Origin: Macrostomum hystrix
Lineage: Eukaryota; Animalia; Platyhelminthes
Direction of reading: 5' to 3'
Length of the DNA stretch: 64,000 nucleotides
Assembly: GCA_950097015.1 (NCBI GenBank)
Contig: CATNEN010000005.1
Coordinates: forward strand, 1,674,001-1,738,000
Positions 22,060 to 45,800 of this stretch are shown piece by piece. Each line of letters opens with the position of its first letter. Position 1 is the stretch's first letter. The position numbers and the translations under genes are program-made. The notes below the pieces were generated by a model, which saw only the letters and a program-made list of their open reading frames with translations, was not told where the DNA came from and ran no database searches.

Positions 22060-22265
22060 TGAATCATGGCTAACCCAGCGTTTGAATCATGGCTAAACCA
22101 GAGCTTAAATCATGGCTAAACCAGAGTTTGAATCATGGCTAAACCAGAGTCTGAATCATTGCTAAACGAGAGTTTCAATCATGGCTAAACCAGAGTTTGA
22201 AATTGAATTATGGCTAACCCAGCGTTAGAATCATGGCTAACCCAGAGTTTGAATCATGGCAAAAC
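22060..22265. repeat. Short array of the 23-bp Helitron-internal satellite
   Basis: GAATCATGGCTAAACCAGAGTTT units. Confidence 0.85.
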
Positions 22266-23341: not shown

Positions 23342-26240
23342 ATGGATCTTGCGGCTGGTTCAAGTAGGCGCTCTTCGAATAGAGTAGTGAAACCAGTGCA
23401 ACGATTGGCAAATTCTGCTGCGTCATTTTATGATTCGAAGTACCTACTATTCTTCATTCGAAAGACAAGAACTTATCATAACTTTTCCCGTGGCAGTCTT
23501 GCACTTAGCCATAATGAGCCTGATGTGAAATTCATTTTTGTAAGTAATTTTTTGCTTACTTACTAGGCCCAGGCCTAATCCTAGTAATTGTTACAAATGC
23601 TATTGCATATTGTATACAAAATTCTGCAGGATTTGAAAAAATAAATAAATTGCTTGAGTGCATATGGCTTAAAATGAATGTAGTTTTGTGTGCCTAACTA
23701 TCAAATATCTATTAACTCCTACAAATATATTTATTAGGGCCTAAAGTTAAATGAAGCTAAATAGTTTTTTATATTGTTTTACTAGTAGGCTGGGCTTCTA
23801 TAGCCATATGCCTAGTTTAGGCCATGTAGGGAGTAGGCCCTGATGCCCAACTATAGAACTAGTTAGGTATTTTTTAGTGAATTAGGCTTATTCTAAGATT
23901 TCATCTTTTTATAGTTTTAGTAATACTAGGCCAAGGCTGTTTAATTTGCAAAAGACTACTTTTTAGTGCTTGAAATAGGCTGTTTAGTTGCTATCAATGT
24001 TAGAGTATGATTAGCTAACTCATGCATAAAGAACTATGGTTGGTTTGGCTAGCTTTCCTTTCTTTTCTATATGTTCTCTATTCTAAGTATAGAGAGAATA
24101 TAGAATTTTGGCCATTTTTAAATGTCTTATTGTCTATTTTTTTAATATATATTTTGTATAATGTATTCATTTTCAAACTTGACTGCCTTCATTGATTTTT
24201 ATAACATTTTATATAGTGGTCTCAGTATGTTTATATATCTATTTATCTATGAGCTATTTTATTCCTATGCTAAGCCTAAGGTGTTCAATTCATAGGAAGG
24301 TCTATTTGCTGATAAGGTAGGCCCTATATTCTATCCAATAGCAAGTTTACTATTTGAACTATTGTCCAGTGCTTTAGTTTTCTATTTTAATATTTCTTAT
24401 ACTTTTAGTTTTCCTAGTATTTTAATAGGCTATATTTGCCAACTCTATTAAGCTATCTAAAGTTTTATTTTAGTTAAGTTTGTCTATTTTTCCAATGGAT
24501 TTATTCTCTTTAGCTTGTCTATCTTTCTAAAGGACTCTTTTGTTTAGTTTGTCTAACTTTCTAATAGGCTATATCTATTTTGTTAACTATTCTAAAAAGA
24601 ATTTTCTATTTAGTTTGTTTATAATTCTTAATTAAAAAATTAATTTGGTCTAATATTAGCTCAAAATCTAATAATGAATCACATTTTTATTTTAGGGTGA
24701 GGACTACCCACTTGCTCTCAAGGATGGCATTTTCAATGGCATGTTCATTGCAGCTGAACCATGGTCAAAAATGATCTACCTTGAGAAGGAGCTTGATGCA
24801 TTCATAACTGAAAACAAGGAGAACTCCGAGCTCTCTGATCATGTCCAGTCTCATATGAAAGTCTTCATGAGACAACAAGAAGACTCAAGTGATGAAGATG
24901 CAGGTGATATTGACGATTCGGATGATGATGAGACCTGGCAGCCTACTCCGCCTCCTACTCAGGTTTCTTTTGTAAGCCCAAGTCCAGTTTCGACACCTAC
25001 AGCTGCTCATTCTCGTGCTAGGAAGCAATCTAAAGGCAGTCTAGCAAACAAGCGGCCAAGGACAGCTGGTACTCATGTTGAAGACAGACACCAAAATTCT
25101 GAGGCATCATTGGCTTTAATTGCAAGTGAGGAACAGCGTGCCTTACCACCGGAACTACTTCCTCAAGTTCTTCAGGCTCATGAATCAGCAAAGGCAGCAA
25201 GTGCAAACGATCCCACAAATTCCAAGCCTCTCACACTGGCTGAATTTCAGGAAGGAATGGGTAAGGTTTAATTATTTCTTTCTTGTGCTTTTGTTTTTAT
25301 GCTTTATTCTCATTATCTCAGTGTAATACAACTTTTTTACTCACAAATCCTGCATTTCGTGCTGCTTTATGTAATCACTATCAGTATAGTACAAATGTGA
25401 AACACCAAATGTTTCAGACAGTTTGAAGCGGTTCATCGCTCACAAACTGAGGAAGATTCGCACTTCATCATCCAGCTTGCATCAAATGGTATCAGCTGAT
25501 TTCCTTAAGGAGGTAGGTTTCTCAGTTTCTGTGCAAATTAATTTACTTTCTTTACTAACCATTTACTATAAAATTATTATATGCTTTACTTTGCCATTTT
25601 ACTTTACTGTTTTTCTTATTTTTCGCTCTTCTTCATGTGGCTTGACGTTTTCACATTTCACTGACATTTATCATGACATAATCCAAACAATCGGTCCTGA
25701 GTACCAATTTTCTTTGTACTTTTTCGTAGGAATTTGAAGGCCACGATGGGCGAGTTTGCAATTTCTCAGATCTGCCTCGTACAACGACGTCGAAGTTCAT
25801 CAGGGCATATGCTTCTGCGAGGTATGGCGTCGAGTATGTGCAATCGCATGTTTTCGGAGAGTACAAAGGCACGACACAAAGGCCAAAGGCTCCAGGAGAA
25901 GTGCAAGACCATCTTAAGAGTAAGCGATACAATTTCTTTGCAACTGAATGTTTTTTGGCAACTGACTTAGTATTGTGGGCATTAGATGGATGCAGGTCAT
26001 TCTATATAGTCTTTTAAAGCTAAAAATTCAAACTGGCTCACTGTAGCCATTCCATTGTTGGAAAATGTTTGTGTGAATTTGCTGCTACTATAAAATCTTT
26101 CTTAAAAAAAACTAGGCATTCTGAACAAGGCCTTCAATATCCCGAGGGATCAGACGGTTTCTGCGTGGACAGCCGTCAAAGACTCTCTGAATCGACTTGG
26201 TCCAGAGTCAACCTTCCGCAAGCGAAAGGCCGGTGATTAG
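23342..26240 (+). CDS. CACTA accessory gene, 5 exons, 390 aa, C-terminal BEN-like domain
   Basis: Exons 23342-23539, 24696-25260, 25418-25512, 25730-25919 and 26116-26240 splice in frame (1173 nt). The C-terminus TSKFIRAYASARYGVEYVQSHVFGEYKG...HLKSILNKAF...AWTAVKDSLN resembles BEN helical spacing (recognised by eye). Confidence 0.65.
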
Positions 26241-26700
26241 ACTGACGGCTAAACGTGTGTCGCAATATTTTAACTGAAGATGCAATCACCCAACTGCCAT
26301 TCGACATGTAACAAACTATAACGTTTTTGAACTGAATCGATCCCTATTTTACGTTATCTGCGCTAAAGTCAAACTCTTACTCTGTAGTGTTTTTTTAATA
26401 TAAAATGAAGCGACTACCTTAATTATTTTTTTAGAATAATAACTGTTGCGTTTGAAAAGTGTTGGCACTCTTTGTATGGGTAGTTAGGATACCCTTAATG
26501 ATTTCCGTAGTCGTTCAAAATGTATATATGTGGAAGAATCTAAACTCCTTCAACTTTAACGCCACCGAGCTAATTTATTCCACTTCATTTCATATTTATC
26601 GATAGATGATGGTGCACATTCTTATTTCGATGGCACGGGTACGTAATTTTCTCCAAACTTTTCAGTCTATCCTAACACTCGTAGAACTGAAGTTGAAATT

Positions 26701-29145
26701 ATGAGTTCGTCGTCGGAAAGTCTGTCCTCTGGGTCGTCGGAAAGTCTGTCCTCTGGGTCGTCGGAAAGTCTGTCCTCTGGGTCGTCGGAAAGTCTGTCCT
26801 CTGGGTCGTCGGAAAGTCTGTCCTCTGGGTCGTCATATGTCTCGATGTCGGTTGATTCAAGTACACATTCGATTGACACATCCATGGGTGAATACAGCGA
26901 TTCGAGCTCTTCCGCTGCAATTCAAGCAAACGTCGGCGAGCAACCGACTATTGCAATTCCTGCTGATGACGAGAATGAAGTGCAGGCAGCTGGTCCATCT
27001 GATATCGAGCACCCTGAAATATTTTCTGCGGATGAGGATAGTAACCTTCTTTCTGTCTTTTGTATCCAAGGTATCTCTATGGAGGTCAAATGTGCCCTTC
27101 TAATGTTGTGGATGATCTTGTCGAACGTTTCCAAGAAAGCTGTTAAAAACATGCTTCGCCTCATTTCCATTCTGTCTCCTCGCGCTGCTTTACCTACATC
27201 TTACAAAGCAATGGAAGCGGTTCTGCTTCGTTCATTCATTTTAAAACCGGACTTCGTTGTGAAAGTTTGTTTAGCGTGTCTACTTATAAACTGTAGTGAA
27301 CATCCAGTCGACTCTTTCGAGGGACTATGGCTCTTAAATGTAAACCATCAGGTGGAGCTTACAGTTGAAAGGCATTTAAATGATATTTTATCTTACCAGC
27401 GTGAGCTAAGGCGAGGATTTCAAACTGACATTCTGAACTCTGCTGTTAGCAATGAACTAGAAACCGGCTCATCTCCTGACATTTTTCACTTGTATTTTCT
27501 TCTTTCGGCTGACGGAGCAAACTTCTTTAAAGTTTCTGAAATGTCTGTGTGGCCTTTCTGTGCACTGTGCCTCAATTTGCCTGTTAGATTACGCCAGAAG
27601 TTTGTCAACATTATCACAATCGCTTTGTTTACCAATCGAGGAAAGCCGAATTTTGAAAAGTTTTTGCCTACTATTTTAAATCGCTTGCCTTCGTGTGTAA
27701 AAGTAAGGAATGTGACGTTTTTTCTTCACTTCTCGTTTTTTACCTGCGATTTGCCCGCTTTATCTCACCTTTTTGGAATCAAGCAATTCAACGGACAATT
27801 TGCTTGTCCCAGATGCATCCTACCTGGCAAGTCTCTAAAGGTGTCAGAAAAAGGCCAAGTTCGTGTCTTCCCCGCTGTCCATGGAATTCCGCTTCGAACT
27901 AATGCCATGCATGCGCAGCATCTCACAGTTCTCAAGGCTCAAGGGCTTAAGGATTATTTTGGAATCAAACGCGAAACTGCTCTTCTCAAAATCATTCGTT
28001 TTCCAGAAAATTTCATTGTTGATTCTATGCATTGTCTCTGGGAAGGTCAAGTAAAACACATTCTAGCCTTCTTGACTGATTCTAAGACTAAAAGCTGCAA
28101 TCCCAATCATTACCGTGTGCTAGGCTCAGCATCTGTCAATGTAATCGACTCTCAGATTATGCAACTGAAACTTCCCCAAGGTATTAGCAATGTTCCTCCA
28201 ATTAGTCAGCTCTCACTTTGGAAAGCGAAAACATACAAGATTTTTGCTCTGTATCTGTTTCCATCAATTCTGCTTCCACGAATCGAAAATCCCGAACTTA
28301 GGGGCCTGCTCCTTCTTCTTAATTCTATTTATAACTTGCTGTACTCGCAAAATTCTTGTGTTTCAACTTTAAAACGTCTGTGCAATATGTTTCTTAACCT
28401 GTGTCCTGAGTTTTTTGGCGAACGTGTTCTGCTTCTTAATTTTCATCTTCTCTATCATCTACCCGACCAGTATGAACGATTTGGTCCTCTGTATTGTGCA
28501 TCAATGTTTCCCTTTGAGTCAGCTATGCATGGCTTTAATATGCTTCATTTTGGCAGTCGATTTCATGGAAAGCAAATTTCCGAAAAGTTTTTCTGGCTAA
28601 AAGTGCTATTGTATTCACTGCAACCTGCTGCAGGCTCCAATCCCTCAATTTCTGATGCACTCCTTGTCATCGCTAAGCACTACTGCAATCCTCCTGAGCG
28701 CGAAAATCGAACTCTAGGCGCTTCTGGGGGTAAAATTTTAACAACCACTTCTGCGGATTGCACTTTAAAAACATGTAGTTCGTATGTCCTGGATGTATCA
28801 AATTCATATTTTGCTATTAATCATTTTGCCGATAGCAAAATCTTTGGCTCTTTTCTGACTCCACAATGTCGTTTAATCGACTTACTGTTCAATGCTGTTC
28901 CGGATTTTACCAATATTGGTGCTAGTGCATCTGAACAAGCAATCTTTCTTGCTTTTTTTACATCTGATGTTCCACTCCGAAATATGCTTATCTTTACGAG
29001 TCAGGAACCCACTCGGGAAAATTACAATTGCATACGTCTCACTGATGTGGCTGCGAGGTGCATTCGAGTCGATGTCAACTTTCCGAACTTGCCATCAGGC
29101 AGTTTTTGTCTGGTACCCCTGTTGGAAGAGTGTGAGCACGATTAG
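26701..29145 (+). CDS. CACTA/EnSpm-type transposase, 814 aa, single ORF
   Basis: SADG...SVWP...LNLP...RQK, CDLPA...FNGQFACPRC, VDSMH and FHLLYHL...FGPL...MFPFE motifs; N-terminal 27-bp (SSESLSSGS) repeat x5. Confidence 0.85.
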   Translation: MSSSSESLSSGSSESLSSGSSESLSSGSSESLSSGSSESLSSGSSYVSMSVDSSTHSIDTSMGEYSDSSSSAAIQANVGEQPTIAIPADDENEVQAAGPSDIEHPEIFSADEDSNLLSVFCIQGISMEVKCALLMLWMILSNVSKKAVKNMLRLISILSPRAALPTSYKAMEAVLLRSFILKPDFVVKVCLACLLINCSEHPVDSFEGLWLLNVNHQVELTVERHLNDILSYQRELRRGFQTDILNSAVSNELETGSSPDIFHLYFLLSADGANFFKVSEMSVWPFCALCLNLPVRLRQKFVNIITIALFTNRGKPNFEKFLPTILNRLPSCVKVRNVTFFLHFSFFTCDLPALSHLFGIKQFNGQFACPRCILPGKSLKVSEKGQVRVFPAVHGIPLRTNAMHAQHLTVLKAQGLKDYFGIKRETALLKIIRFPENFIVDSMHCLWEGQVKHILAFLTDSKTKSCNPNHYRVLGSASVNVIDSQIMQLKLPQGISNVPPISQLSLWKAKTYKIFALYLFPSILLPRIENPELRGLLLLLNSIYNLLYSQNSCVSTLKRLCNMFLNLCPEFFGERVLLLNFHLLYHLPDQYERFGPLYCASMFPFESAMHGFNMLHFGSRFHGKQISEKFFWLKVLLYSLQPAAGSNPSISDALLVIAKHYCNPPERENRTLGASGGKILTTTSADCTLKTCSSYVLDVSNSYFAINHFADSKIFGSFLTPQCRLIDLLFNAVPDFTNIGASASEQAIFLAFFTSDVPLRNMLIFTSQEPTRENYNCIRLTDVAARCIRVDVNFPNLPSGSFCLVPLLEECEHD

Positions 29146-30414
29146 CTCAGATAACTTCAAACGCGCGTCAGTTTTTCAGGGTCATTGTCTTGTCTCGTTT
29201 TCTATTCTGTAAGTAGTCCTGGTTGTCAATGTAATCATTGCATGAAATTTTTTCTGGTACGTATTCCTGATTTATCTGCTGGGTAGCTATTGTTGTGTAG
29301 CTTTTGTCGATGTTAGCCAGCCGATGTGTGTGTGCTAGGCTTATTCTAAAAGCTCTATTGCTAGGACACAGGAAGAAAATATGACTGGGGAATTAGACGG
29401 GACCAAGAAAGAGACACTAACTGGCAAACTTTCGGCTAGCAAACGCCGGCTGGCTAACATCGTAGACCCAGTACCATCTAGTACTTGTACTTAAGCAAGC
29501 TTTGTTTCTTGTTAGTTTTTCTAAACTAAAAAGCCCTTTTTCACAAAACATGCGCGCCTAATGCTCAGCTATATTTATCCTACATGTTATGTTTTACGTT
29601 TTCTCTCATATGCCGTGCGCTTTGTTTAGATACACCTAATTCTTTGTCACATTTTTGCAGTTTTTTATGTTTAATTGCTTTTACGTAAAACTCCGGGGAC
29701 ACAAATTTTTTTTTTACATTTGGCTTCTTTGTTTGGTAATAAATATTACATTTTCGGCTCACTCACTTAGTTGAGACCTGTCTTATACATAAAACTAACC
29801 AATTGTGTTATTTTGAGTGTGTCTTATTGTGTGTACATCGCCCATGGTTTGGTAAGACAAACCAGAATAGAACTAAGTACGGTTTTAATGAGCCGATTTA
29901 AACGAAGGTACGAAGTGCAATGTATTCATATATATACGAGTATATATGGCTCGCAAGATGACTAAAAATGCATTATTTCTAATTAATTGCAACCACATTA
30001 TAAATGCATTTTATATATATAGAATTTGCATTATAATGGCAATTATAATGCCATTAAGTGGCAATTATAATGCCATTAAGTGGCATTCAATGTCATTATA
30101 ATGGCCAGTAAAAATGCATTATTTACCCATTATGGGTCCCTAGGGAAATGTGCTCTATGGTCGCGTCTGTACATTTGGATTTTTCAACAGGCATCCAAGC
30201 TATGTACGCTTGGTCGATTATCGATTTCATTGAAAGGATAAGATGGGCTCTGATTGTTTTCTCTGCGCCAACACCTACTAGCTACTACTTGGTTTACCTA
30301 AGCTAAGTATAACTTGCTTTCATTTCACTTTGTTCCGCTTACATTCATCTGATATTATTCATATATCATATTTCTATTCCATATCTATTATTTAAACTAA
30401 TCACTGTACCCAGA

Positions 30415-33400
30415 ATGGCAAAACGTGGTGCTAAAAGCGCATTGACGAAAAGTCGCGAAGCAAAGAGACGCCGCCGAGAAGAATCAGCCGAAGCTCGAGA
30501 GCAGCGACTGCAAGCAGGAAGGCGAGGAAAACAAGAAAGCGAAAAGAAACGTCGGTCTGGCGAGTCGATATCTGAACGCGAAGCCCGCCTGCTAGCAGAT
30601 CAGGAGCGCTCCAGTCGCCGAAGATCGCTGGAGACGGATCCTGAACGCGAAGCCCGCCTGCTGGCAGATCAGGAGCGCTCGAGTCGCCGCAGATCGCTGG
30701 AGACGGATCCTGAACGCGAAGCCCGCCTGCTGGCAGACCAGGAGCGCTCGAGTCGCCGCAGATCGCTGGAGACGGATCCTGAACGCGAAGCCCGCCTGCT
30801 GGCCGACCAGGAGCGCTCGAATTGGCGAAGAACAGAAGAATCTGATTCGCAGCGGGAAGATCGGCTAGAGTTTCATCGATTGCGCTATCGGGCGTCTCTC
30901 GAGCCGGAACAAAGCCTCAGGTAAAGCGACCAATTTGAAGAAAAAGAAATTCATGCCAATATGTTTCTGAGTGAAAAATGTTTTTCAAATGTTTTTACGC
31001 ACAATCAATGCATTGTTGCCGCTTTTCTAGAGCAATCCTCTTGGTTGTTTTAAAGCCAATAATATGTCATTTTGATCGCGTTTTGCACATGTTTGCCTAA
31101 TTTAGCTAAAGTCTGTAAATGCCAAATTCTCTAAACGTACAGTCAAGTGTGTCTGCCTAGCACTCTGCCAATTAGTGCAACGCAAGTCACGAGAGTGCCA
31201 GGAGATGGAAACTGTTACTTCCATGCAGTGTCTGACCAGCTTATCGGCACACCAATTTACATGGACCATAAGCAACTTCGGCATACAGTTGCTGCCAATG
31301 CAAGGCCACTACTCGAAGCTCAGCATGCCACACTTGATGCTCTTGGCCTAACATTGGACAGAGTGATTGCTGAGACAGAGCAGAATGGAGTTGATGTGCA
31401 TGAGCACATTGCACCGATTCTGAATCAACTTCTGGATGTGGATTATGTAATTTATCAGTATGCTGACCACGACAGTAGACAGCTCCAGCTGGTGCAGCAG
31501 GTTTCAGCAGCAAGAAGGCCTGCAGCTGCTGTGGTGCAACTTCTTTATAACCGCCAGGGTGAGCACTATGAGTCTCTGCGTTTTGTGACTCCTGTTCCTG
31601 AGGCCAATGCTGCATCTGCTCTGCCGGAGTTTCTTGCTGGCAACTCTGCAGGGTGAGTCTTTTCATATTTTTATTTTTACATTATATTCTCCAATCCTCA
31701 AAAATGTTTATACCAGGCCTAAGAAATATATCGTCCTGATTATTTCTTGTTTTAAAGGAGTGAAAGCTGCAGTTTTATTTTTTGTTGCAGCCTCAACCGT
31801 CAGGCTGTGGTCAGTGCTGCATCTGATATGACAGAATTTTCAGATGAGGATGCTGAGTGAGTTCTATGGAAATCTATACTTTTTGCCTCTATAACTATGA
31901 ATTACTAGAGAAATTTCTACTGCATTTTGTATCTTTTATTTTGAAAATAGATGTAGCAGTATTGAGAAAAACTAAAAGTACTAAATGCATTGACCCTCTA
32001 CTTTCGTCGACAGTTCCGATTCCACAGCCAGGCCGGAACCACAAGCCCATCAGGTGGGCCCCATGAACGAGCCCTGCCGGCACTGCAACGCCTTGCACTG
32101 GGAACGAGAACCAGCAGGAATTTGCTGTGCAGCTGGCAAGGTAAAGCTGCCCGTGAAGACCGTGCCGCAAATTCTGGAGAACCTGTTCGTTGGACGCCAC
32201 CGGCTGAGCTCTGATTTCTTGGCAAACATCAGAAGCTATAATGCAGTGCTGCACCTCACCTCACTGAAGGCTACCCTGCGACCCATGCGAGGTTACTGCC
32301 CCAGTTACATCATCAATGGGGAGCTGGTCCACAACATCCCGCCTCTGTATGCTGGGGCTTCGGATGTGCCTCATGGCTGGCAGGTTTATTTCACGGACCG
32401 TGAATTGGAGAGCCGCCAGAGTCTAAGCAAAAGTGTCAAACTGGAGCTGCTGCAGCTGCTGCAGGCCGTGTTGCACGACTGCAACGAATATGTCAGGAGT
32501 TTGAAGGCTGCAGCACAGCGGATTGCCGAAGAGCCCAAGCTAGGAGATGCTCGAATTGTCATTTACCCGAACCGCCGACCGACTGAAGAGCATATCCGGT
32601 GAGTCTGACTAAGGGTTTCAGTTCGTTAGTGAATAATGCATTATCGCGGTTTGGTATTTCGTGTACTGTCTGTAAACAGAGTTGAAAAATTAGTTAATCG
32701 TTTATCAATATTGAATAAAAATTTTGTTGATTCGTGATTTCGTGATTCTAGATTTGCTATCTTTCCAAAAACTTATATGCATGTTCGAAACAGTTCATAA
32801 AGACAGGCTGCGGTGAAGTATTCATTGGCCAGTACCCCAATTTTAGGCGCTACAATTTGCCTGAAGCAAATGAGGTCGGCATCCTTGTTGTTGGCGACAC
32901 CTCTGAAGGCTCCATAACTTCACGCGACGTCTTGATTGAGCTTCGACATCCTGATGATGGAAGCCACAGGCGTCTGCACTCAGTTTCTGTGACGCATCGA
33001 GCCTACGATGCACTGCAGTACGTGCTGTTCCTGCCGTACGGACAGGACGGGTGGCACCCAGAACTGAGAATGACCAACAACGGCAAGCTGACTCCTCGCA
33101 AGTACTATGCTAGCGAGATCATGGTGCGGCCTGGTCAGTTCAATGCGCTTCACTACGGCCGCCGACTGTTTCAGCAGTACCTTGTTGATGCTTGCTGCAA
33201 AATTGAGGGCGAGAGGCTTACGTACCTTCGCACCCATCAGGACGACCTTCGAAGCGAAACGTACAGCGGCCTTCGAGACGCCCTTTTTGCTGCAGACGGA
33301 CTGCGGAAAAATTCTGACCCCAATGAAGTCGGGAAGCGAGTTTTTCTGTCTTCCAGCTTCGTAGGCGGGCCCCGCTACATGATGGAGCGACTTCAGGATG

Positions 33401-36400
33401 CTATGGCCTATGTGCATAAGTTTGGCAAGCCAGACCTGTTCATAACAGCTACCTGCAACCCGAAATGGACAGAAATCAGCGCTGAACTGCTACCTGGACA
33501 GCGACCTGAGGATCGACCGGATATTGTCACCCGCGTGTTTGAGCTGAAGAAGAAGGCTCTAATGGCTCGGCTCACAAAATACTTCGGACAGGTGGCTGCG
33601 CACGTCTGTGCTCTGGAGTATCAGAAGCGCGGTGAGAAAAATCTGTCTAAAGGATTTGATTTTTATATTTGGAACTTCTGCGCATTGTGAAAATAGTTTT
33701 TAGTTTCTGGATTGTGTGAATGATTTTTTTAGGAGACCTTCAGATTTTAGAAGATTCAGATATTTAGTTTATTGCGATTTTGCCTTGGCGTAATTACTCG
33801 TTTTTATCAATCAATTACTGAATGATTTCTGAGCATTTCTGTTGTATTGTCGCAACTCAGGTCTGCCGCATGTGCACATTCTGCTGTGGCTGAAGAGCAG
33901 GCATCGTGTGACTCCTGACCGATATGATGAGATTGTTTCGGCGGAGATTCCGGATCCTCAGACTCAACCGGTGCTGCATGAGCTGGTCAAAACCCACATG
34001 ATTCACGGTCCGTGTGGCAAAGTGAACCCCAATTGCGCCTGCATGGAGAATGGCAAATGCAGCAAGGACTTTCCGAAAGATTTCATGCCCGCTACAATGG
34101 TGACTGATGCAGGCTATCCTCGATACAGAAGGCGCTCCCCGGAAATGGGCGGATTCGAGGTGGACAAGCCGTTCAGAGGTGGAACTGTTCGCATGGACAA
34201 TCGGTGAGTGTCAAGCTAAGAACGAATGGCAAGCGCATATCTGAAATTGCGACTATGTACATTTAAACTACGTACGTATTTTAACCATCACATGTTTTAA
34301 TTCAGTCTTTATAATAATTTATGACTAAAATTCACTCAAGCACACAATCACAATTCCATTTTTCTATTGAATTTACAGTGATCACAATTACATTTTTTTC
34401 TCAACAGTTATCTAACGACCTTACATAAAACTTTAAGGTTTGTCGTGCCCTACAATCCAAGTCTGCTGCTTGAATTTGAGTGTCACATAAATGTGGAAGT
34501 CAGTGCATCGGTCAAGTCAGTCAAGTACATCATTAAGTACTTGCTGAAGAATGGCGATATGGCGACCTTCCGAGTGACACAGGCCAAGAATTCGCCACAG
34601 TCCGAGCCTGCGGCTACTGGGAATGCGCCGCAGTCAGCTGATCGGCAGCAGAATCAGCCTGCGCCAGTTCGAGAAGCACGCGATGAGATCTCTGAGTACC
34701 TTTCTGCCCGTTACATTGGACCCATGGAAGCTGTCAATACGATTCTGGGTTTCGAAGTAAGCTGTATGATTATTGTCTTCGATAACTTTTATGCTTTTAT
34801 TATTGCTTGCCACTTTGTTTCGGCGGCCACTGACCTGGAGCCTTAAGATTTAGCTATAATAGCTTTTATTCCGTGATACTAAAGTAATGCTAAATAAAGG
34901 AAATAAATAAATAAATAAATTCTAACATTGCATCAGGTGCACAACAGGTTCCCAGCTGTAATTCGCCTCTGCGTTCACGAGCGAAATAAACAGTTGGTGT
35001 ACTTCAACGAGGCAACTGCGAGCGCCAGGGCAACGGCGCCAAGAGATTCAACGCTAACCGCTTTCTTTAAGCTGTGTCGAACTGACGAGTTCGCTCGGAG
35101 CCTCCTCTACACTGAGGTACCTTCCTTCTTCATCTGGCACCAGAGCGCCAGGGAGTGGCGCCGCGCCAAGCGGGGCGATGATGTTGAAGGATATCCGGGA
35201 GTGAAGCGAAACACCAACATTTCACGCATGTATACCGTGTCTCCGAGAGCAGGAGAGCTGTTCTTCATCCGCCTCCTGCTGCTGCACGTGCGAGGACCGA
35301 CCAGCTACGAGGCACTGCAAACTGTAGATGGCGTGCTGTACGACGCCAGGGCTGCGTGTATAGCTCTCGGCTTGCTGCAGCGAGACGACCACTGGCACAG
35401 ATGCTTGGCAGAGGCTGTGCAGTCACGAATGCCCAGAGCTGTGAGGCACCTGCTTGCAGTTATTCTTGAATGGGGCGAGCCACAAGATGGCGAAAAACTG
35501 TGGAGCAGCTTCGCGGAAGACCTGAGCGAGGACTTGCGCTACCGCCATCCGAACCTGAGCGTCGATGAGGTGACCGACATGGCACTGCGCGAACTGCAGA
35601 ACATGCTGACCTCCATGGGTGGCCGGAGCTTGCCAGAGTACGGGCTGCCTGTTGCCTCAGCTGCACCTTATGTCGGACCACTGCAGTTCGACACGGTCGA
35701 ACAGACCGAGATCGCCGAGATGCGCGTGCCACAGCTGACTGACGAGCAGCGAGCTGCGTATGAATTCATCACTGCAGACGTGATTACCGGCTCTGGCGGC
35801 CTGCACTTTCTGGATGCGCCGGCTGGAACTGGAAAGACGTTTCTGCTAGAGGTGTTGCTGGCTTTCGTGCGCAGCCGGTGCGAAATTGCCATTGCAGTCG
35901 CTTCGTCTGGTATTGCAGCCACACTGCTGCCGGGAGGACAGACGGCGCATTCAGCGTGAGTTCCGTTGATGAATTGATCAGTGGCATCATGCATATTTAA
36001 TCACTTTTGTGAAAATCGTATACTTAAAAGAGTCTTGCAATATTTGTTTGGTAGATTCAAGATTCCGGTGTGTTTGGTGAGGTCAGAAAGAGGCGTCTGC
36101 TCTGTCGGTGCCCAGTCGCGACAAGCTGGCGTGTTCAGGAGCGCGCGTCTCATTGTCTGGGATGAGGTCTCCATGACCAACCGGCAGGACTTGGAGGCCG
36201 TGGACTGGACTCTGCAAGACATTCGGAAGAATGATGCTCCATTTGGAGGAATTGTCGTCGTGTGTAGCGGAGATTTCCGTCAGTTGCTTCCAGTTGTTAA
36301 AAATGGAACCAGGGCAAACAGCGTCGCAGCGTGCGTTAGCAGGTCCAGGTTATGGAAATCATTCCGACGGCACCGCCTGACAAGGAACATTCGGCTGCAG

Positions 36401-37457
36401 AGCAGTTTCGCTTCTGCGTTATGCCAGCGTTACTCGCAGTTGCTGATGCAGGTGAGCATTTTTCGTTTTTTAAGGATTTAGTAGCTAGACTAGAGCTGAG
36501 CTGGTAGAGTATATTTGTGCTTCTTAGTAGGCGTCATGTTTAGGTGTAAAAATACGCAAACTTTATTTTTTATTTACAATTACACACTGATTTGATGCAC
36601 TCTTGTTTGATATAATTCTGTTGCTAAATTTTCTCCTAATTTGAGTTTCAGAAAGTATAATTGATTGCTTTATACCAATATTTACCTCACAGATCGGCTC
36701 AGGTTCTATTGAGGAGGACTCTGATGGCAACGTTTCGCTTCCGCCTGAGATCCTGATGCCGGCAGGTGCCTCCCTGAAGGACCTGATCGAGTTCGTTTAC
36801 CCTTCGTTCGAAGCAACTGACGCTAGAGACGCCTACTTTGCCAGCAGAGTAATTTTGGCTCCGTATAACGAGGCCGTTGATGCGATCAACGATGAGTGCC
36901 TGGCCATGTTCCCGGGCAGCATGCGGGAGATCAAGTCGATCGACAGCGTGGCTGATGAGGATTCTGCCACGCACTTCCCTCCTGAGCTGCTCAACCGATT
37001 GGAGGCACCGAACTTGCCGAAGCACCTGCTTAAGTTTAAAGTGGGCATGCCGGTGGTGCTTCTGCGAAACATCAACCCGCCACGGCTGTGCAACGGAACG
37101 CGACTGATTGTCCTGGCACTGGGGGACAATGTGCTGCGGTGCAAAGTTGCGGCAGGCCAATTCTCTGGTGACGAGATTCTGCTGCCCCGGATTCCGCTAC
37201 AGCCGAACAATGCGGACCTGCCAGTGTGCTTCAAGAGGCTGCAGTTTCCCGTCCGGGCCAGCTTCTGCCTGACGGTTCACAAAGCTCAGGGCCAGTCTCT
37301 GGAGACCGTGGGCATCGACTTGGCGGAAGGCTGCTTCGCCCACGGCCAGCTGTACACCGCTCTGTCTCGGGCCAAAGATGCAGCCAATGTTCGCATCCGG
37401 ATTTCCGGTAACAAGACGAGAAACATTGTGTACCCAGAGGTGCTTTCTGAAGATTAG
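30415..37457 (+). CDS. Helitron OTU-Rep-PIF1 helicase protein, 10 exons, 1764 aa, no stop or frameshift
   Basis: Exons 30415-30920, 31143-31652, 31791-31856, 32014-32598, 32847-33631, 33861-34203, 34438-34756, 34937-35955, 36055-36451 and 36693-37457 (5295 nt, all GT-AG, phases match). Motifs: 23-aa charged repeats; OTU VPGDGNCYFHAV...GEHYES; CRHC...CC zinc motif; Rep LFITATCNPKW, EYQKRGLPHVHILL, KYIIKY; helicase DAPAGTGKT, VWDEVSM, GDFRQLLPV, TVHKAQGQSL, HGQLYTALSR. Confidence 0.92.
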
Positions 37458-38618
37458 GCTGACCAACAGTTTCTGAAACTTATCGTTGGAGTGCCCTTGA
37501 TTTCATCAGCGGTAAATGTCAGTGGGATAGCTCATTCTCGTACAGAGAGCTGAATTTTTGGGAAGCAATCATGTACAATTGGAAACGGAGCTCATAAACG
37601 CTACTCATAAACAATTCCACGTGGGTTTAGGAATGGAATGTAAGCCTAATCCAAAGCTAAAATGTGCCCGTTAAAAATATCCCGTTTTAATCGTCAATCG
37701 ACGATGACAGCGAATTCATTGGCCCACATGCTTCCAATGTTTATAAACTTGTCTTTAACGGACATTTTTTTACACCTGTCCGCACAGACATGCCGTCAAT
37801 CGACGATGACAGCGAATTCATTGGCCCACATGCTTCCAATTGCTTTCAATGTTTAGACTTCCGTCTTCAAGGGACAGTTTTTCGTAAAGTGCTGTTTTTT
37901 CGTCGAAGTCCAATTCAGTAAACTTTGCTATTGTTTCTATACTATTTTAATGTTATCTGCCCATTTTTCTACTTGGTGACTGCCTTGGTCTCTAAGCAGC
38001 AAGCATTTTTCTATTCAAATCTCAAGGACGCAATTCGCAAATGAATTTTTAAAGGTTCCTGATTTATGATTTGCTTGCTGCTGCATCAGGGAAGGGCCTC
38101 CCTCTCGGTTAACAAAAATCCCTGATGGATAGACGCCAATGCAAAACGGAAGCAGACAGTTTGTATTTTGTAACAAAAGATGATTAAAACCGTACCTCAT
38201 TATAAACAATTAAGTTGCAATCCACTTGCATCGATTTTTTGAATCATTTGTCAATGTTGATGCTTTGTCAATGTTGTCAATGTCAATCGGTTTTTACCTA
38301 AAGCAGCCATGCGACTGTCCGCTTCTGAGTCACGACGAGAGGGAATTGAATAAAAATTTGCTGAAAGCTATCAATGTCAAAAGGCCTAGCTTTCGTACTT
38401 TAACACAATTGAGTCCGAATTGTATACTGCTCGCTCAAATCACTGAATTGCTATTTACACCATGTTGTAAAATGTGCCCCCGAACGGGGGGCTAAATTGC
38501 TATCCTCCATTCCATCCTCCATCCATCATTGTAGCTTAAAAAAATACAGCTGCTAAAAAGTATACACTGGACGAATTAAAAATATTTGTGCTCCCCGGAG
38601 GGGGGCAAAACTTGCTAG

Positions 38619-41215
38619 TCCAACTATACTAAATCTCTAAAGTCTGTCTGTCTGTCTGTCTGTGGAATTTCGATACACAGGCTAAATGCCTCAACCAAAT
38701 TTGATCGCGTTTTTTGCTAAACATGCCAAATTTTACTGGCATGAGACCTTGAAAATTTCGTTAGTCTGCTTCAATGCTAACAATATTAAATATTCGAAAA
38801 ACGAGTTTTCCTATTGCTTTCAATAGGAGGCCAAACAAGGTTAAATTAGAATAGGGCCGGACACTGTCAGCTTTATTAGATTGCATCGGTGCTTTTTCTC
38901 GCCCGCGCGTGCATTGGTATAGCACTGAACAGGGCCCGATACTCTCAATTGAATAGGATTGCGTCACTGCTTTTCGACCCGTACGTACGTTTATAAATTT
39001 GTCTCTTGGCTGATCGAGTGATTTGATTTAAATACGCAAACCGTACATAGCAGATTTCATGATTGGGCTTTTATGATGCTCAATGCTAGCGAGACCTCTC
39101 CTCCTCCTTTCTATCCATAAAACTGCAGCCTTTCTATTGTCAAACCTTGTCTCGACTTCGATCATTGTGCCGCTTTCTTTTCATCTAGCTCCGAAGTAAA
39201 GTACTTTAATGCTATTGTAGAATGCAGGTAGAATTTCAGCATCGGTTTTGTTACTGCTTCTTTTTCTTCTAATCTTCTAAACATCAGCAGTTAAAAACGT
39301 AAGTTCCTGTTTATTAGTATTTTTTGGGCATTTTTGGGTTCGAGTATAAATACGAGTAAGTAAGTAAGCGATTTTGGTTAGCTACTGTCGAAGCAGATAT
39401 TTGTTAGCTTTATTATTCCTGTACTCGCTTTCAGAAAATAGTATTCGTTTTCGAGTAAAGCAGCAAGTTTTATTCGATAATAAAACTTAGGAAATATTTT
39501 TTGTGCATAGCTGCAGGCGCTATCACAATTGAGAACTGCAAGAAAAAAATATTGAGCGCAGCTAAGAGCGTAAATTATTTCCAATTTTTCTATTTTTTAG
39601 CATTGCTTTAAGCGTTATTCGATTAAAAAAATGGCTTATTTTATAATAATAATTATAAAACTTTATTCGACGAAGTCTGATCGAAACCGTTTTCTAAAGT
39701 GCTCAACGATTTTCTAAATGTGTCCAACGATTTTCTAAATGTGTCCAACGATTTTCTAAATGTGTTTAACAGTTTTCTAAATGTATCTACCGTGCCACAT
39801 GTAACAGGAGATGTAACAGGAGATATTTGTTGCCTTCTGGGCTGAGTAAAACGATGGACACATCGTTTCTATGCTATTTGGGGGCAATGGTTTCCTGTCA
39901 AAGAAAAAGGGCAAAAATTTCTTGCTGCGAGTTTGGTAGCCTGCAAGTAGCCTCCATTCTGGTATTATGGAGGTTCTCTTCTGTTTGAAGAACATTAGTT
40001 CTCTGCTGCTGGGGGAATTAGTTCTCGGCTGCTGGGGGAATTGGTTCTCTGTTGCTCGGGGAATTAGTTCTCTGTTGCTGGGGAAATTAGTTCTCTGCTG
40101 CTGGGGAAATTAGTTCTCTGCTGCTGGGGAAATTAGTTCTCATGGCAAAACCAGCGTTTGAATCATGGCTAAACTAGAGTTTGAATCATAGTTAAACCAG
40201 AGTCTGAATCATTCTAAGCCAGAGTCTGAATCATGGCTAAACCAGAGCTTAAATCATGGCTAAACCAGAGTCTGAATCATGGCTAAATTTACGTTTGAAT
40301 CATGGCAAAACCAGAGTTTGAATAATGGCTAAACAAGAGTTTGAATCATGGCTAAACCAGCGTTTGAATCATGGCCAACCAGCGTCTGAATCATGGCTAA
40401 ACCAGAGTTTATATCATGGCTAAACCAGAGTTTGAATCAAAGATAAACCAGAACTGGGGGATAATCGTCAACTGTGGGATAATTGTAAACTGGGGAATCA
40501 TCATCAAATGGGGATCATGGTCAACTGGGAGATCATTGTCAACTGGGTGATCATCATCAACTGGGGGATCATTGTCAACTAGGGGGTAATAGCCAACTGG
40601 GGTAACATTGTCAACTGGGGATCATCATCAATGGGGGATCATAGTCAACTGGGAGATAATTGTCAACTGGGTGATCATCATCAACTGGGGGATCATTGTA
40701 ACCTGGGGGATCAATGTAAACTGGGGGATCATTGTCAACTGGGTGATTATCTTCAACTGGTGGATCATTGTCAACTGTGGGATCATTGTCAACTGGGGGA
40801 TCATTGTCAACTGGTGGATCATTATCAACTGGGGGATCATTGTCAACTGTGGGATCATTGTCAACTTGGGGAACATTGTCAACTGGGGGATCATCATCAA
40901 CTGGGGGATCATTGTCAACTGGGGAATCATTGTCGACTGGGGGACCATTGTCAACTGGGGGATCATTGTCCCAGATCATTGTCAACTGGGGGATCATTGT
41001 CAACTGGGGGATCATTGTCAACTGGGGGATCATCATCAACTGGGAATCATTGTCGACTGAGGGACCATTGTCAACCGGGGGATCATTATCAACTGGGGGA
41101 TCATTGTCAACTGATCATTGTAGCGTAAAAAAGGCTAAAAATACAGCTGCTAAAAAGTGTATACTGGACGAATTAAAAATATTTCTGCTCCCCGAAGGGG
41201 GGCAAAACTTGCTAG
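38619..41215 (+). mobile_element. Non-autonomous Helitron, unit 2
   Basis: Starts TCCAACTATACTAAA directly after the CTAG of unit 1; first about 0.9 kb closely matches 20820-21680; ends with the hairpin and CTAG at 41212-41215. Confidence 0.85.
40140..41115. repeat. 23-bp satellite (about 40140-40450) followed by 18-bp satellite (about 40450-41115)
   Basis: GAATCATGGCTAAACCAGAGTTT, then TCAACTGGGGGATCATTG. Confidence 0.92.
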
Positions 41216-41809
41216 TCCACTATACTAAAAATGAAATGGTTGGTTGGTTGGTTGGTTGGTTGTAATTGATTTTCTCCCGAACGGCTCAACCGATTTTCAC
41301 CATTTCTTCACCAAAAGATGCTAAATATGGGGACAATTTTACACGTATTTTTATTAAGCTGAACTTCATTGCTAAGGGGATTAAATATTCGAAAAACATG
41401 ATTTTTTAAAGGTCAAACCATCTTGGCCTATTGAGAATTTCACTGACAGCCACTGAATTAGAATTGCATCGTCAAATTGCGCAACAACCCCTAGCTGATT
41501 GAATTTGAAGCCTGCACTCTGGAGACAAATTTGAAATAAATGTACACAACCAACTGCGAGACTGAGTGTACTCTATTTTCTTACTTCATTGTACAAAGCC
41601 AGAACTTTGAGAATTCATTTTATAAGGCTGATTTTTGCACCCACTAACCAACAGTCGGAATAGCCGATGTGTAGGCACTAGGAATAGGTTAGGCTAGGCT
41701 AGGGTTCGATTCTGCACTGGGTCAAATCATTTAGACTAATTTTCAGCCAGTAGTGATTGAAGATTATTTTATATTATTTTTTATATTTCGTAAATAAAAT
41801 ATCATAAAT

Positions 41810-44095: not shown

Positions 44096-44099
44096 GAAA

Positions 44100-45800
44100 A
44101 ATCAACGTCAACTGGGGAGTCATCATCAAAATGGGGATCATGGTGAACTGGGGGATAATCGTCAACTGGGGGATCATGGTAAACTGGGGGATAATTGTCA
44201 ACTGGGGGATCATTGTCAACTGGGGGATCATTGTCAACTGGGGATCATTGTCAACTGGGGGATCATTGTCAACTGGGGGATCATCGTCAACTGGGGGATC
44301 ATTGTCAACTGGGGTATCATTTTCAACTGGGGGATCATTGTCAACTAGGGGATCATTGTCCACTGGGGAATGATTGTCAACTGGGTAATCATGTCAACTG
44401 GGGGATCATTGTCAACTGGGGGATCATTGTCAACTGTAGGATCATTGTCAACTAGGGGATCATGGCCAACTGGGGATCATTGTGAACTGGGTGATCATTG
44501 TCAACTGGGGGATCATCTTCAACTGGGGGATCATTGTCAACTGGGAGATCATTGTAAACTGAAGGATCATCATCAACTGGGGGATCATTGTCAACTGGGG
44601 GATCATTGTCAACTGTAGGATCATTGTCAACTAGGGGATCATGGCCAACTGGGGATCATTGTGAACTGGGTGATCATTGTCAACTGGGGGATCATCTTCA
44701 ACTGGGGGATCATTGTCAACTGGGAGATCATTGTAAACTGGGGGATCATCATCAACTGGGGGATCATTGTCAACTGTGGGATCATTGTCAACTAGGGGAT
44801 CATGGCCAACTGGGGATCATTGTGAACTGGGTGATCATTGTCAACTGGGGGATCATCTTCAACTGGGTGATCATTGTCAACTGGGGTATCATTGTAAACT
44901 GGGGGATCATTGTCCACTGGGGAATGATTGTCAACTGGGTAATCATTGTCAACTGGGTAATCATTGTCAACTGGGGGATCATTGTCAACTGGGGGATCAT
45001 TGTCAACTGGGGGATCATTGTCAACTGGGGGATCATTGTAAACTGGGGGATCATTTTCAACTGGGAGATCATTGTAAACTGGGGAATCATCATCAACTGG
45101 GGGATCATTATAAACTGGGGGATCATTGTCAACTGTGGGATCATTGTCAACTAGGGGATCATGGCCAACTGGGGATCATTGTGAACTGGGGGATCATTGT
45201 CAACTGGGGGAACATTGTCAACTGGGGGATCATTGTCAACTGGGAGATCATTGTAAACTGGGGAATCATCATCAACTGGGGGATCATTGTAAACTGGGGG
45301 ATCATTGTCAACTGTGGGATCATTGTCAACTAGGGGATCATGGCCAACTGGGGATCATTGTGAACTGGGGGATCATTGTCAACTGGTGGATCATTGTCAA
45401 CTGGGAGATCATTGTCAACTGGGGGATCATTGTCAACTGGGGGATCATTGTCAACTGGAGGATCATTGTCAACTGGGTGATCATTATCAACTGGGGGATC
45501 ATTGTCAACTGGGGGATCATTGTCAACTGTGGGATCATTGTCAACTGGGGGATCATTGTCAACTGGTGGATCATTGTCAACTGGGAGATCATTGTCAACT
45601 GGGGGATCATTGTCAACTGGGGGATCATTGTCAACTGGGGGATCATTGTCAACTGGGTGATCATTATCAACTGGGGGATCATTGTCAACTGGGGGATCAT
45701 TGTCAACTGGGGGATCATTGTCAACTGGGGGATCATTGTCAACTGGGGGATCATTGTCAACTGGGGGATCATTATCAACTGGGGGATCATTGTCAACTGA
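44100..45800. repeat. 18-bp satellite, about 1.7 kb
   Basis: TCAACTGGGGGATCATTG; produces the spurious LGDHCQ and NWGIIV ORFs. Confidence 0.95.

What the first reader, a model, noticed from the sequence alone, without database searches (positions are those of the whole stretch)
30415..37457. Intact nine-intron Helitron transposase with an OTU deubiquitinase-like domain
Seen: ten exons splice with matching phases into 1764 aa without a lesion. Exon 2 encodes an OTU fold with the catalytic Cys (GDGNC) and His (GEHY) motifs, between charged 23-aa repeats and the Zn/Rep/PIF1 core. Known: OTU domains are reported in some animal Helitrons, often endonuclease-bearing Helentron types. Here the termini are canonical TC...CTAG and no endonuclease follows the helicase. 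Inference: a potentially active element whose protease may counter ubiquitin-based host control or process the protein; the high intron number is notable.
Basis: partly seen in the sequence, partly recalled or inferred. Interest (0 to 1): 0.75.

Follow-up and report, generated by a model that had tools for sequence, protein, structure and literature searches.

The report
Intact flatworm Helitron with OTU protease domain
This is a real, recently copied rolling-circle jumping gene (a canonical Helitron) whose ten-exon transposase gene also encodes a ubiquitin-protease-like OTU domain. It is a clean example, but this domain combination was already reported in Helitrons in 2024.

Summary
Ten GT-AG exons (30415-37457, + strand) join in phase into 1764 codons with no lesion.

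- **OTU domain.** Exon 2 encodes a true OTU fold with the catalytic Cys and His. Pfam is just above cutoff; PDB sequence and profile hits point to OTUD3. An AlphaFold model (pLDDT 82) matches only OTU deubiquitinases.
- **Junctions.** Five of nine junctions have outside support. Three are collinear with the intronless Helraiser protein and one with Macrostomum lignano proteins. Related families in the same genome conserve exons 6-10 but not the introns between them (Ka/Ks 0.11-0.15).
- **Element extent.** The element is much larger than the stated span, 20795-38618. It starts TC after an A, has a 3' hairpin, and ends CTAG. It has no terminal inverted repeats and no endonuclease.
- **Nested insertion.** A 7.5-kb foreign transposon sits 269 bp upstream of the ATG.
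- **Setting.** The element heads a head-to-tail train of three Helitrons.
- **Exon 1.** The 23-aa repeats are STPR-type repeats.
- **Sister copies.** Of three near-identical full copies, only this one has an open reading frame.

HELIANO (2024) already reported OTU and STPR domains in canonical Helitrons, so this is a new member of a known kind. The scan noted the same kind elsewhere in this genome (s1-262346, s1-332691). Deubiquitinase activity is inferred, not shown.

The parts
20795..20819 (+). Extra exact 25-bp copy of the Helitron 5' terminus, preceded by A at 20794
   Evidence: TRF finds period 25, 2.0 copies, 100% match; sequence read.
20820..22662 (+). Helitron 5' terminal and noncoding part. 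It starts TCCAAC and holds a 23-bp repeat array at 22049-22268.
   Evidence: 99.8% identical to the C12 copy. The same 5' end occurs in at least 40 scored places, mostly preceded by A or by the CTAG of another unit.
22663..30145 (+). Nested foreign TIR transposon. It is an insertion into the Helitron, not part of the family.
   Evidence: Absent from the C12 and C14 copies, whose sequence runs straight from 22662 to 30146. Inverted ends start CCCTAGGGACCC. The 814-aa ORF hits DUF1258.
30146..30414 (+). 269 bp between the nested insertion and the start codon
30415..30920 (+). Exon 1: start codon, basic N-terminus, 23-aa STPR-type repeats (69 bp x3.8 at 30572-30831)
   Evidence: TRF. Pfam STPRs E 0.013, 16.3 bits, below cutoff. 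M. lignano homologues score 28.7-40.6 bits, above cutoff, and align to exon 1. Repeat number differs between copies: +1 in C12, +2 in C14.
31143..31652 (+). Exon 2: OTU cysteine-protease domain (Cys codon 31213-31215, His codon 31564-31566)
   Evidence: Pfam OTU; PDB OTUD3 3.4e-5, profile 1.1e-7; AF2 pLDDT 81.6; Foldseek top hits are all OTU deubiquitinases.
31791..31856 (+). Exon 3: 66-nt acidic linker exon
   Evidence: AG/GT borders and phase. There is no independent support, so this is the weakest exon.
32014..32598 (+). Exon 4: Cys-rich (zinc-finger-like) N-terminal region of RepHel
   Evidence: Aligns to Helraiser 116-283; 64% identical to M. lignano P0004/P0020.
32847..33631 (+). Exon 5: Helitron_like_N / Rep N-terminal part
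   Evidence: Pfam 2.3e-51; Helraiser 318-589, E 1.6e-48.
33861..34203 (+). Exon 6: Rep HUH motif (His codons 33869-33871 and 33875-33877)
   Evidence: Helraiser 591-684, E 4e-28, with LPHVHIL aligned to LPHAHIL.
34438..34756 (+). Exon 7: Rep two-tyrosine motif (Tyr codons 34526-34528 and 34538-34540)
   Evidence: Helraiser 699-745.
34937..35955 (+). Exon 8: linker region and PIF1 helicase start with Walker A (GKT codons 35831-35839)
   Evidence: Helraiser 777-1107; Pfam PIF1.
36055..36451 (+). Exon 9: PIF1 helicase core (Walker B)
   Evidence: Pfam PIF1 1.6e-34; Helraiser 1110-1225.
36693..37457 (+). Exon 10: helicase 2B and C-terminal domains, stop codon
   Evidence: Pfam; Helraiser 1277-1472; 77% identical to an M. 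lignano protein.
37458..38618 (+). 3' noncoding part with the terminal hairpin (38590-38606) and CTAG end (38615-38618)
   Evidence: Sequence. The stem is kept and the loop varies among many copies. The fold is weak by energy, z -1.8. No Pfam hit in its ORFs.
38619..41215 (+). Second unit of the head-to-tail train: a non-autonomous Helitron with the same 5' end and a CTAG end
41216..45901 (+). Third unit: a non-autonomous Helitron with a variant 5' end, filled with 23-bp and 18-bp satellites. It ends CTAG followed by T.

Best explanation
Window 20795-38618 is an autonomous canonical Helitron (HLE1 type) of a Macrostomum-like flatworm. Its single gene has ten exons and encodes one 1764-aa protein. 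The domain order is: basic N-terminus, STPR-type 23-aa repeats (probably DNA binding), OTU cysteine protease, acidic linker, Cys-rich region, Rep HUH nuclease with two tyrosines, and PIF1 helicase.

Shown here: the anatomy, the OTU fold with Cys and His in place, the intact Rep and helicase motifs, the canonical ends and A|T target, recent copying, and purifying selection on the coding exons.

Inferred: Rep nicks at the TC end, the helicase unwinds 5' to 3', the hairpin plus CTAG ends the strand, and read-through gives the head-to-tail trains. The OTU domain most likely acts as a deubiquitinase travelling with the transposase. It would protect the transposase, or factors it needs, from ubiquitin-dependent degradation or silencing. 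This is by analogy with the tested VTD deubiquitinases of zebrafish Helentrons.

This copy has the only open reading frame among three near-identical full copies, but a 7.5-kb transposon has landed 269 bp upstream of its ATG, so its expression is uncertain.
For: Gene model.

Junction support:
- Blocks of conservation with the 83% and 73% families stop within 2-6 nt of the borders of exons 6-10, except that the 73% family aligns straight through intron 8. Introns differ in length and sequence.
- Ka/Ks is 0.11-0.15 for exons 6, 9 and 10.
- Junctions 5, 7 and 8 fall on consecutive residues of intronless Helraiser, 589|590|591, 776|777 and 1107|1108|1109.
- Junction 4 is continuous in M. lignano P0004/P0020.

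OTU domain. The Cys and His motifs are kept in relatives.

OTU retention: an open OTU exon lies 1.3-2 kb upstream of the Rep exon in at least five diverged lineages of this genome.

Same architecture in M. lignano.

Ends: 5' TC after A in 11 solo copies, CTAG followed by T, many CTAG|TC tandems. No inverted terminal repeat. No endonuclease.

Recent copying: copies at 99.4-99.8% identity, and at least 154 candidate 5' ends and 589 candidate 3' ends.

Literature: Helitron VTD deubiquitinases are active, while Helitron OTUs are untested (PMC9741609).
Against: - There is no transcript evidence, and exon 3 (66 nt) and junctions 1-3, 6 and 9 rest on splice signals and phase only.
- Pfam OTU is barely above cutoff.
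- The residue two positions after the catalytic His is Glu here and varies in relatives, so activity is not assured.
- The OTU is far less conserved than Rep between lineages, 34-40% against 62-78% amino-acid identity. That could mean weak constraint.
- The nested insertion may have separated the gene from its promoter.
- The 3' hairpin is not significant by folding energy alone.
Confidence: 0.85

Rival explanations
1. The OTU (and STPR) exons form a separate upstream gene, or a captured host gene fragment, carried by the Helitron. They are not part of the transposase polypeptide.
For: HELIANO states that most extra domains, OTU included, lie in ORFs other than RepHel. Junctions 1-3 have no independent support here. 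Exon 3 is too short to be seen in other families.
Against: Phases match at all three junctions with no stop. M. lignano predicted proteins P0004 and P0020 hold OTU, the Cys-rich region and Rep in one chain with similar spacing. The order OTU then Rep is kept in at least five lineages.
Confidence: 0.08
2. The OTU domain processes the transposase itself, cutting the STPR-OTU part from RepHel, rather than removing ubiquitin from substrates.
For: Some viral OTU-like proteases do both. Self-processing was proposed for Helentron OTUs (PMC4067079). A Gly-Gly lies at the exon 2/3 junction.
Against: The tail after the OTU core is not conserved in relatives. The best structural matches are deubiquitinases and deISGylases.
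Confidence: 0.12
3. The OTU is a relaxed or inactive passenger, a pseudo-enzyme or ubiquitin-binding module with no role in transposition.
For: OTU identity drops to 34-40% between lineages whose Rep stays 62-78% identical. Pfam scores are at or below cutoff in most relatives.
Against: 56 of the 58 OTU matches in the genome have no stop inside the match. Cys and His motifs are kept across flatworm relatives. Against the closest family, 84% amino-acid identity at 80% DNA identity implies purifying selection.
Confidence: 0.15
4. This copy is a dead relic despite its open frame. The nested 7.5-kb insertion has cut the gene off from its promoter, and the family is now moved, if at all, by other lineages.
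For: The insertion lies 269 bp upstream of the ATG and is absent from both sister copies. The sisters carry a frameshift or two nonsense codons.
Against: The promoter's position is unknown. The C12 frameshift is one extra A in an A5 run and could be an assembly error. Divergence of 0.2-0.6% shows very recent copying.
Confidence: 0.4

Closest known systems
Helraiser / Helibat (bat canonical Helitron, PDB 7LCC)
   Same: Collinear from the Cys-rich region to the end of the helicase. HUH, two-tyrosine and Walker A motifs align. Both have TC...CTAG ends, a 3' hairpin and an A|T target.
   Different: Helraiser is intronless and has no STPR repeats or OTU domain. This protein has about 380 extra N-terminal residues and nine introns.
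OTU- and STPR-bearing HLE1 Helitrons reported by HELIANO (PMC11417382, 2024)
   Same: Canonical Helitron with OTU upstream of RepHel and STPRs, as that paper describes for HLE1.
   Different: The paper treats OTU as lying in a different ORF. Here it is an exon spliced in phase into the RepHel gene. Flatworms are not mentioned in its main text.
Macrostomum lignano predicted proteins (for example UniProt A0A1I8GC52, NCBI PAA67824.1)
   Same: Same order STPR-OTU-Cys-rich-Rep-PIF1. Core identity is 64-77%.
   Different: OTU is only 34% identical. Those entries are partial or defective gene models, named helicase or OTU protein rather than described as Helitrons.
Helentrons with OTU (and VTD) domains, for example zebrafish DrT2
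   Same: A rolling-circle transposon carrying a deubiquitinase-type domain. VTD activity was shown biochemically.
   Different: Helentrons have a C-terminal AP endonuclease, a T|T target and subterminal inverted repeats. None of these is present here.
OTUD3, DUBA and nairovirus vOTU deubiquitinases
   Same: Same fold (TM 0.6-0.7, probability 1.0), with aligned Cys and His motifs.
   Different: Sequence identity is 15-22%. There is Glu instead of Asp after the His. Substrate is unknown.

Membership tests
Canonical Helitron (HLE1) | 5' end TC and 3' end CTRR | tested here: met
   The 5' end is TCCAAC at 20795/20820 and CTAG is at 38615-38618. The same ends occur in dozens of copies.
Canonical Helitron (HLE1) | Short GC-rich hairpin about 10-20 nt before the 3' end | tested here: met
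   GCTCCCC-loop-GGGGGGC at 38590-38606, 8 nt before CTAG. The stem is kept and the loop varies among copies. Folding energy alone is weak.
Canonical Helitron (HLE1) | Insertion between A and T without target duplication | tested here: met
   A precedes TC in 11 solo 5' ends, including this copy at 20794. T follows CTAG at solo 3' ends. A few copies show T before TC.
Canonical Helitron (HLE1) | RepHel protein with HUH, two Tyr and a PIF1-type helicase, and no endonuclease | tested here: met
   Pfam; Helraiser alignments; nothing follows the helicase.
Helentron / Helitron2 (HLE2) | C-terminal AP endonuclease (Helentron) | tested here: not met
   The CDS ends with the helicase. The 1161 bp that follow hold no ORF longer than 89 aa and no Pfam hit.
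Helentron / Helitron2 (HLE2) | Asymmetric terminal or subterminal inverted repeats and a T|T target | tested here: not met
   No 12-mer of the reverse-complemented 5' end, with up to 2 mismatches, occurs in the last 500 bp. The target is mostly A|T.
OTU cysteine proteases (Pfam PF02338) | Sequence match above the curated cutoff | tested here: met
   24.6 bits against a cutoff of 23.3, so marginal. PDB profile hit to OTUD3 at 1.1e-7.
OTU cysteine proteases (Pfam PF02338) | OTU fold | tested here: met
   AF2 model pLDDT 81.6, pTM 0.76. The listed Foldseek PDB matches (to rank 46; 57 at E <= 0.001) are all OTU domains.
OTU cysteine proteases (Pfam PF02338) | Catalytic Cys and His in place | tested here: met
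   GDGNC and EHY align with the OTUD3 and vOTU motifs. His is nearly invariant in relatives.
OTU cysteine proteases (Pfam PF02338) | Isopeptidase activity on ubiquitin or a ubiquitin-like protein | not testable with these tools
   This needs an enzyme assay. No Helitron OTU has been assayed according to PMC9741609.
STPR repeats (Pfam PF21107) | Tandem 23-residue repeats matching the profile above cutoff | tested here: inconclusive
   Period is exactly 23 aa. The window scores 16.3 bits, below the cutoff of 27. Homologous M. lignano N-termini score 28.7 and 40.6 bits.

The most novel reading that the evidence does not exclude
The OTU domain is the fast-evolving face of a conflict between these Helitrons and a ubiquitin-based host control. 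It keeps its catalytic Cys and His and an open frame in every lineage. Yet it has diverged to 34-40% identity between lineages whose Rep is still 62-78% identical. That pattern could reflect repeated adaptation to, or escape from, host ubiquitin-pathway factors rather than relaxed constraint.
Probability: 0.2. Interest if true: 0.65.

Novelty: new member of a known kind. Interest (0 to 1): 0.4.

Why it matters
No OTU domain of any Helitron has been tested for activity (PMC9741609), and why rolling-circle transposons keep acquiring deubiquitinase-type domains is an open question. This locus offers a lesion-free, well-delimited canonical Helitron gene with a validated exon structure. Several diverged sister lineages in the same genome allow comparison. 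The host is related to a laboratory flatworm. It would make a practical starting point for enzyme and transposition assays. In itself it does not change what is known.

Tried and rejected
- **Single-sequence AlphaFold of exon 2** gave a useless model (pLDDT 39). It was replaced by a 13-sequence alignment.
- **First guess at the 5' end.** I first took 30146 as the element's 5' end, because near-identical copies start matching there. That was rejected when the C12 and C14 copies were seen to continue into window 22662 and upstream.
- **Bases after CTAG.** I considered that the 14 nt shared after CTAG in several copies belonged to the element. That was rejected: they are the 5' end of the next, variant non-autonomous unit in a tandem.
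- **Intronless OTU-RepHel fusions.** I looked for them in the genome. OTU hits inside open frames of 1418-2100 aa do not coincide with Rep hits, so they cannot be claimed as Helitrons.
- **Extra genes.** I looked for RPA-like or zinc-knuckle genes, as in note s1-332691, and found none in this element.
- **Host from a 100% protein match.** I tried to name the host this way. There was no such match; the best named relative is M. lignano at 77%.
Full report
**Observation**

Reading the + strand from 30415 to 37457 gives ten exons:

| Exon | Coordinates |
|---|---|
| E1 | 30415-30920 |
| E2 | 31143-31652 |
| E3 | 31791-31856 |
| E4 | 32014-32598 |
| E5 | 32847-33631 |
| E6 | 33861-34203 |
| E7 | 34438-34756 |
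| E8 | 34937-35955 |
| E9 | 36055-36451 |
| E10 | 36693-37457 |

A script that never joined the exons confirmed the following:
- Every intron is GT..AG.
- The lengths sum to 5295 nt, which is 1764 codons plus the stop.
- No exon body holds a stop.
- The seven split codons read Ser, Gly, Asp, Arg, Gly, Arg and Ala.

Pfam, exon by exon, finds:
- OTU in exon 2 (24.6 bits, cutoff 23.3).
- Helitron_like_N in exon 5 (2.3e-51).
- PIF1 in exons 8 and 9.
- Pif1_2B and UvrD_C_2 in exon 10.

The 23-aa repeats are a 69-bp tandem repeat of 3.8 copies at 30572-30831. I did not build or search the joined protein.

**Are the introns real?**

There is no transcript data, but three independent lines support the model.

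1. *Exon-limited conservation.* Two diverged Helitron families of the same genome (about 83% and 73% DNA identity) match this copy only in blocks.
   - For exons 6-10 the block ends lie within 2-6 nt of my exon borders, except that the 73% family aligns straight through intron 8.
   - The introns between these exons differ in length and are not alignable.
2. *Purifying selection.* Against the 83% family, exons 6, 9 and 10 give Ka/Ks of 0.15, 0.15 and 0.11.
3. *Collinearity with intronless relatives.* The intronless bat transposase Helraiser (PDB 7LCC) aligns to each exon so that three junctions fall on consecutive residues:
   - Exon 5 ends at residue 589, the split Gly is 590 and exon 6 starts at 591.
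   - Exon 7 ends at about 776 and exon 8 starts at 777.
   - Exon 8 ends at 1107, the split Ala is 1108 and exon 9 starts at 1109.

   Junction 4 is continuous in Macrostomum lignano proteins P0004 and P0020.

Junctions 1-3, 6 and 9, and the 66-nt exon 3, rest on splice signals and phase alone.

**The OTU domain**

- Exon 2 hits OTUD3 (4BOU) at 3.4e-5 and nairovirus OTUs by sequence.
- A profile of 13 relatives raises OTUD3 to 1.1e-7, with the GDGNC and EHY motifs aligned.
- A single-sequence fold was poor. With the alignment, AlphaFold gives pLDDT 81.6 and pTM 0.76.
- Foldseek then returns only OTU deubiquitinases among its listed matches: CCHFV vOTU, Kupe and Hazara vOTU, DUBA, OTUD3 and OTUD1, with TM 0.6-0.7 and probability 1.0.

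The fold and the catalytic Cys (codon 31213-31215) and His (codon 31564-31566) are therefore in place. The residue two positions after His is Glu here and varies in relatives. Enzyme activity is not shown.

**The rest of the protein**

*STPR repeats.* Exon 1 gives a sub-threshold match to the whole STPRs profile (PF21107, E 0.013, 16.3 bits). The M. lignano homologues that align to exon 1 score 28.7 and 40.6 bits, above the cutoff. The charged repeats are therefore STPR-type 23-residue repeats, a DNA-binding repeat family.

*Catalytic motifs.*
- Exon 6 carries the HUH motif and exon 7 the two tyrosines.
- Exon 8 carries Walker A.
- All of these align to Helraiser's catalytic motifs.
- Exons 9 and 10 complete the PIF1-type helicase.

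*No endonuclease.* Nothing follows the helicase. The 1161 bp after the stop hold no ORF above 89 aa and no Pfam match.

**The element is larger than the finding**

The window is C5:1674001-1738000 of a 220-Mb, 42-contig assembly.

Full copies lie on C12 (99.8%) and C14 (99.4%), and partial copies on C1 and C19. Against C12, homology covers window 20819-22662 and 30146-38633. Window 22663-30145 is therefore a 7.5-kb insertion inside this Helitron, absent from both sister copies and lying 269 bp upstream of the ATG.

*The 5' end.*
- It reads TCCAAC... at 20820.
- An exact extra 25-bp copy of the terminus lies at 20795-20819, preceded by A.

*The 3' end.*
- A GC hairpin lies at 38590-38606, followed by 8 nt and then CTAG at 38615-38618.
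- Across copies the stem is kept while the loop varies.

*The family in the genome.*
- The first 361 bp recur in at least 154 candidate places (40 scored, 94-100% identical).
- The last 94 bp recur in at least 589 candidates.
- Among 5' ends, 11 solo copies follow an A and many follow the CTAG of another unit directly.
- Solo 3' ends are followed by T.
- No inverted copy of the 5' end lies near the 3' end.

These are the defining features of a canonical Helitron (HLE1). Those of Helentron/Helitron2 are absent.

*The train.* In the window the autonomous copy heads a head-to-tail train of three units. The two that follow it are:
- 38619-41215, a non-autonomous unit.
- 41216-45901, a unit with a variant 5' end, filled with 23-bp and 18-bp satellites.

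**State of the copies**

- The window copy is the only one of the three with an open reading frame.
- C12 has one extra A in an A5 run at the position of window 35493. This may be an assembly error. It also has one extra 69-bp repeat.
- C14 has two nonsense substitutions, at the positions of 31537 and 34604, and two extra repeats.
- Divergence of 0.2-0.6% shows very recent copying.
- The nested insertion came later. Whether it cuts the gene off from its promoter is unknown.

**Retention and divergence of the OTU**

The OTU exon has 58 matches in the genome, and 56 of them have no stop inside the match. In at least five Helitron lineages it lies 1.3-2 kb upstream of the Rep exon.

| Measure | Identity to this copy, lineage by lineage |
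|---|---|
| Rep, amino acids | 86, 78, 77, 64, 62% |
| OTU, amino acids | 84, 36, 34, 40, 37% |

Against the closest family the OTU shows 84% protein identity at 80% DNA identity. That implies purifying selection of about the same strength as on the core.

Beyond the closest family the OTU is far more diverged than the core. This may reflect weak constraint outside the active site, lineage-specific acceleration, or domain exchange.

OTU hits inside very long open frames elsewhere do not coincide with Rep hits, so they were not counted as Helitrons.

**Host and relatives**

- A full HMMER scan of 1.84 billion representatives found only 15 relatives of the OTU exon.
- The named close ones are M. 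lignano proteins with the same STPR-OTU-Cys-rich-Rep-PIF1 order.
- Exon 10's best named relative is also M. lignano, at 77%. The next named relatives, spider and mite proteins, are at 42-48% (unnamed assembly fragments reach 57-83%), and there is no 100% match.

The host is therefore probably a Macrostomum-like flatworm other than M. lignano. This is an inference from transposon proteins. The sequence is not human.

**Comparison with what is known**

- OTU-like proteases were long known from Helentrons (PMC4067079).
- HELIANO (PMC11417382) reported in 2024 that OTU also occurs upstream of RepHel in canonical HLE1 elements, that this OTU is distinct from the HLE2 one, and that STPRs are almost exclusive to HLE1.
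- Introns in Helitron genes are known from plants and C. elegans (PMC8788227).
- Erven et al. (PMC9741609) showed that Helentron VTD domains are active deubiquitinases. They state that transposon OTU domains have never been assayed.

What this locus adds is modest:
- A lesion-free flatworm example.
- Evidence that the OTU and STPR 'separate ORFs' are exons of the RepHel gene.
- The contrast between OTU retention and OTU divergence.

The scan noted the same kind on other DNA of this genome (s1-262346, s1-332691). Tandem Helitron trains were noted there too (s1-262253).

**Mechanism**

*Shown:* domain anatomy, catalytic residues, ends, target preference, recent amplification and selection on the coding exons.

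*Inferred from Helraiser biology:*
- Rep nicks at the 5' TC.
- The helicase peels the strand.
- The hairpin plus CTAG ends the strand.
- Missed or re-used termini give the CTAG|TC trains.

*Inferred by analogy:*
- The STPR repeats add DNA binding.
- The OTU removes ubiquitin or a ubiquitin-like modifier, to stabilise the transposase or blunt host control. I put this at about 0.55.

The alternatives, self-processing and an inactive passenger, are not excluded.

**Verdict**

I rate it a new member of a known kind, with interest 0.4.

Noticed in passing
window 22663-30145: The nested 7.5-kb transposon has inverted ends starting CCCTAGGGACCC, not CACTA, and an apparent 3-bp target duplication (TAA/AAA). 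Its 814-aa ORF (26701-29145) hits only DUF1258. The empty site is seen in the C12 and C14 Helitron copies.
   Followed up: partly
window 38619-45901: Two non-autonomous Helitrons follow the autonomous one head to tail. The second (41216-45901) has a variant 5' end and is almost wholly 23-bp (41807-44098) and 18-bp (44107-45799) satellite. The same 23-bp repeat also sits inside the autonomous element at 22049-22268.
   Followed up: partly
window 20219-20833: A 204-aa Ser/Pro-rich ORF runs straight into the Helitron's 5' end, so the element may have inserted into a host exon. It has no Pfam match.
   Followed up: no
G000: C7:1975252, C8:3074080 and 3086779, C38:3039595 and 3052222, C38:21970616 and 21976412: OTU-like matches (37-40% identity) lie inside very long open frames of 1418-2100 aa, in places where the Rep exon does not hit. 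These may be another OTU-bearing gene or mobile-element class.
   Followed up: no
G000: C38:28197341, C38:19325789, C38:19332213, C38:5981046: Rep matches at 49% identity lie inside uninterrupted open frames of 1702-1840 aa. This looks like an intronless Helitron lineage in the same genome, with no OTU match at those places.
   Followed up: no
window 2151-3407: A 418-aa ORF has a reverse transcriptase domain (RVT_1, 1.2e-21), so it is a retroelement fragment.
   Followed up: no
window 12705-13332 and 46459-47086: Two GC-rich stretches show the same pattern of overlapping ORFs on both strands. The second is a GGC-rich 24/69/144-bp tandem repeat. This looks like a duplicated low-complexity block.
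   Followed up: no
L025, L026 and L040 (G000 C24:4018923-4022283, C7:9850669-9854029, C3:16092726-16096086): Some copies of this family's 5' end directly follow the CTAG of a different Helitron family with another hairpin (CTACCC...GGGTAG). Trains therefore mix families.
   Followed up: no
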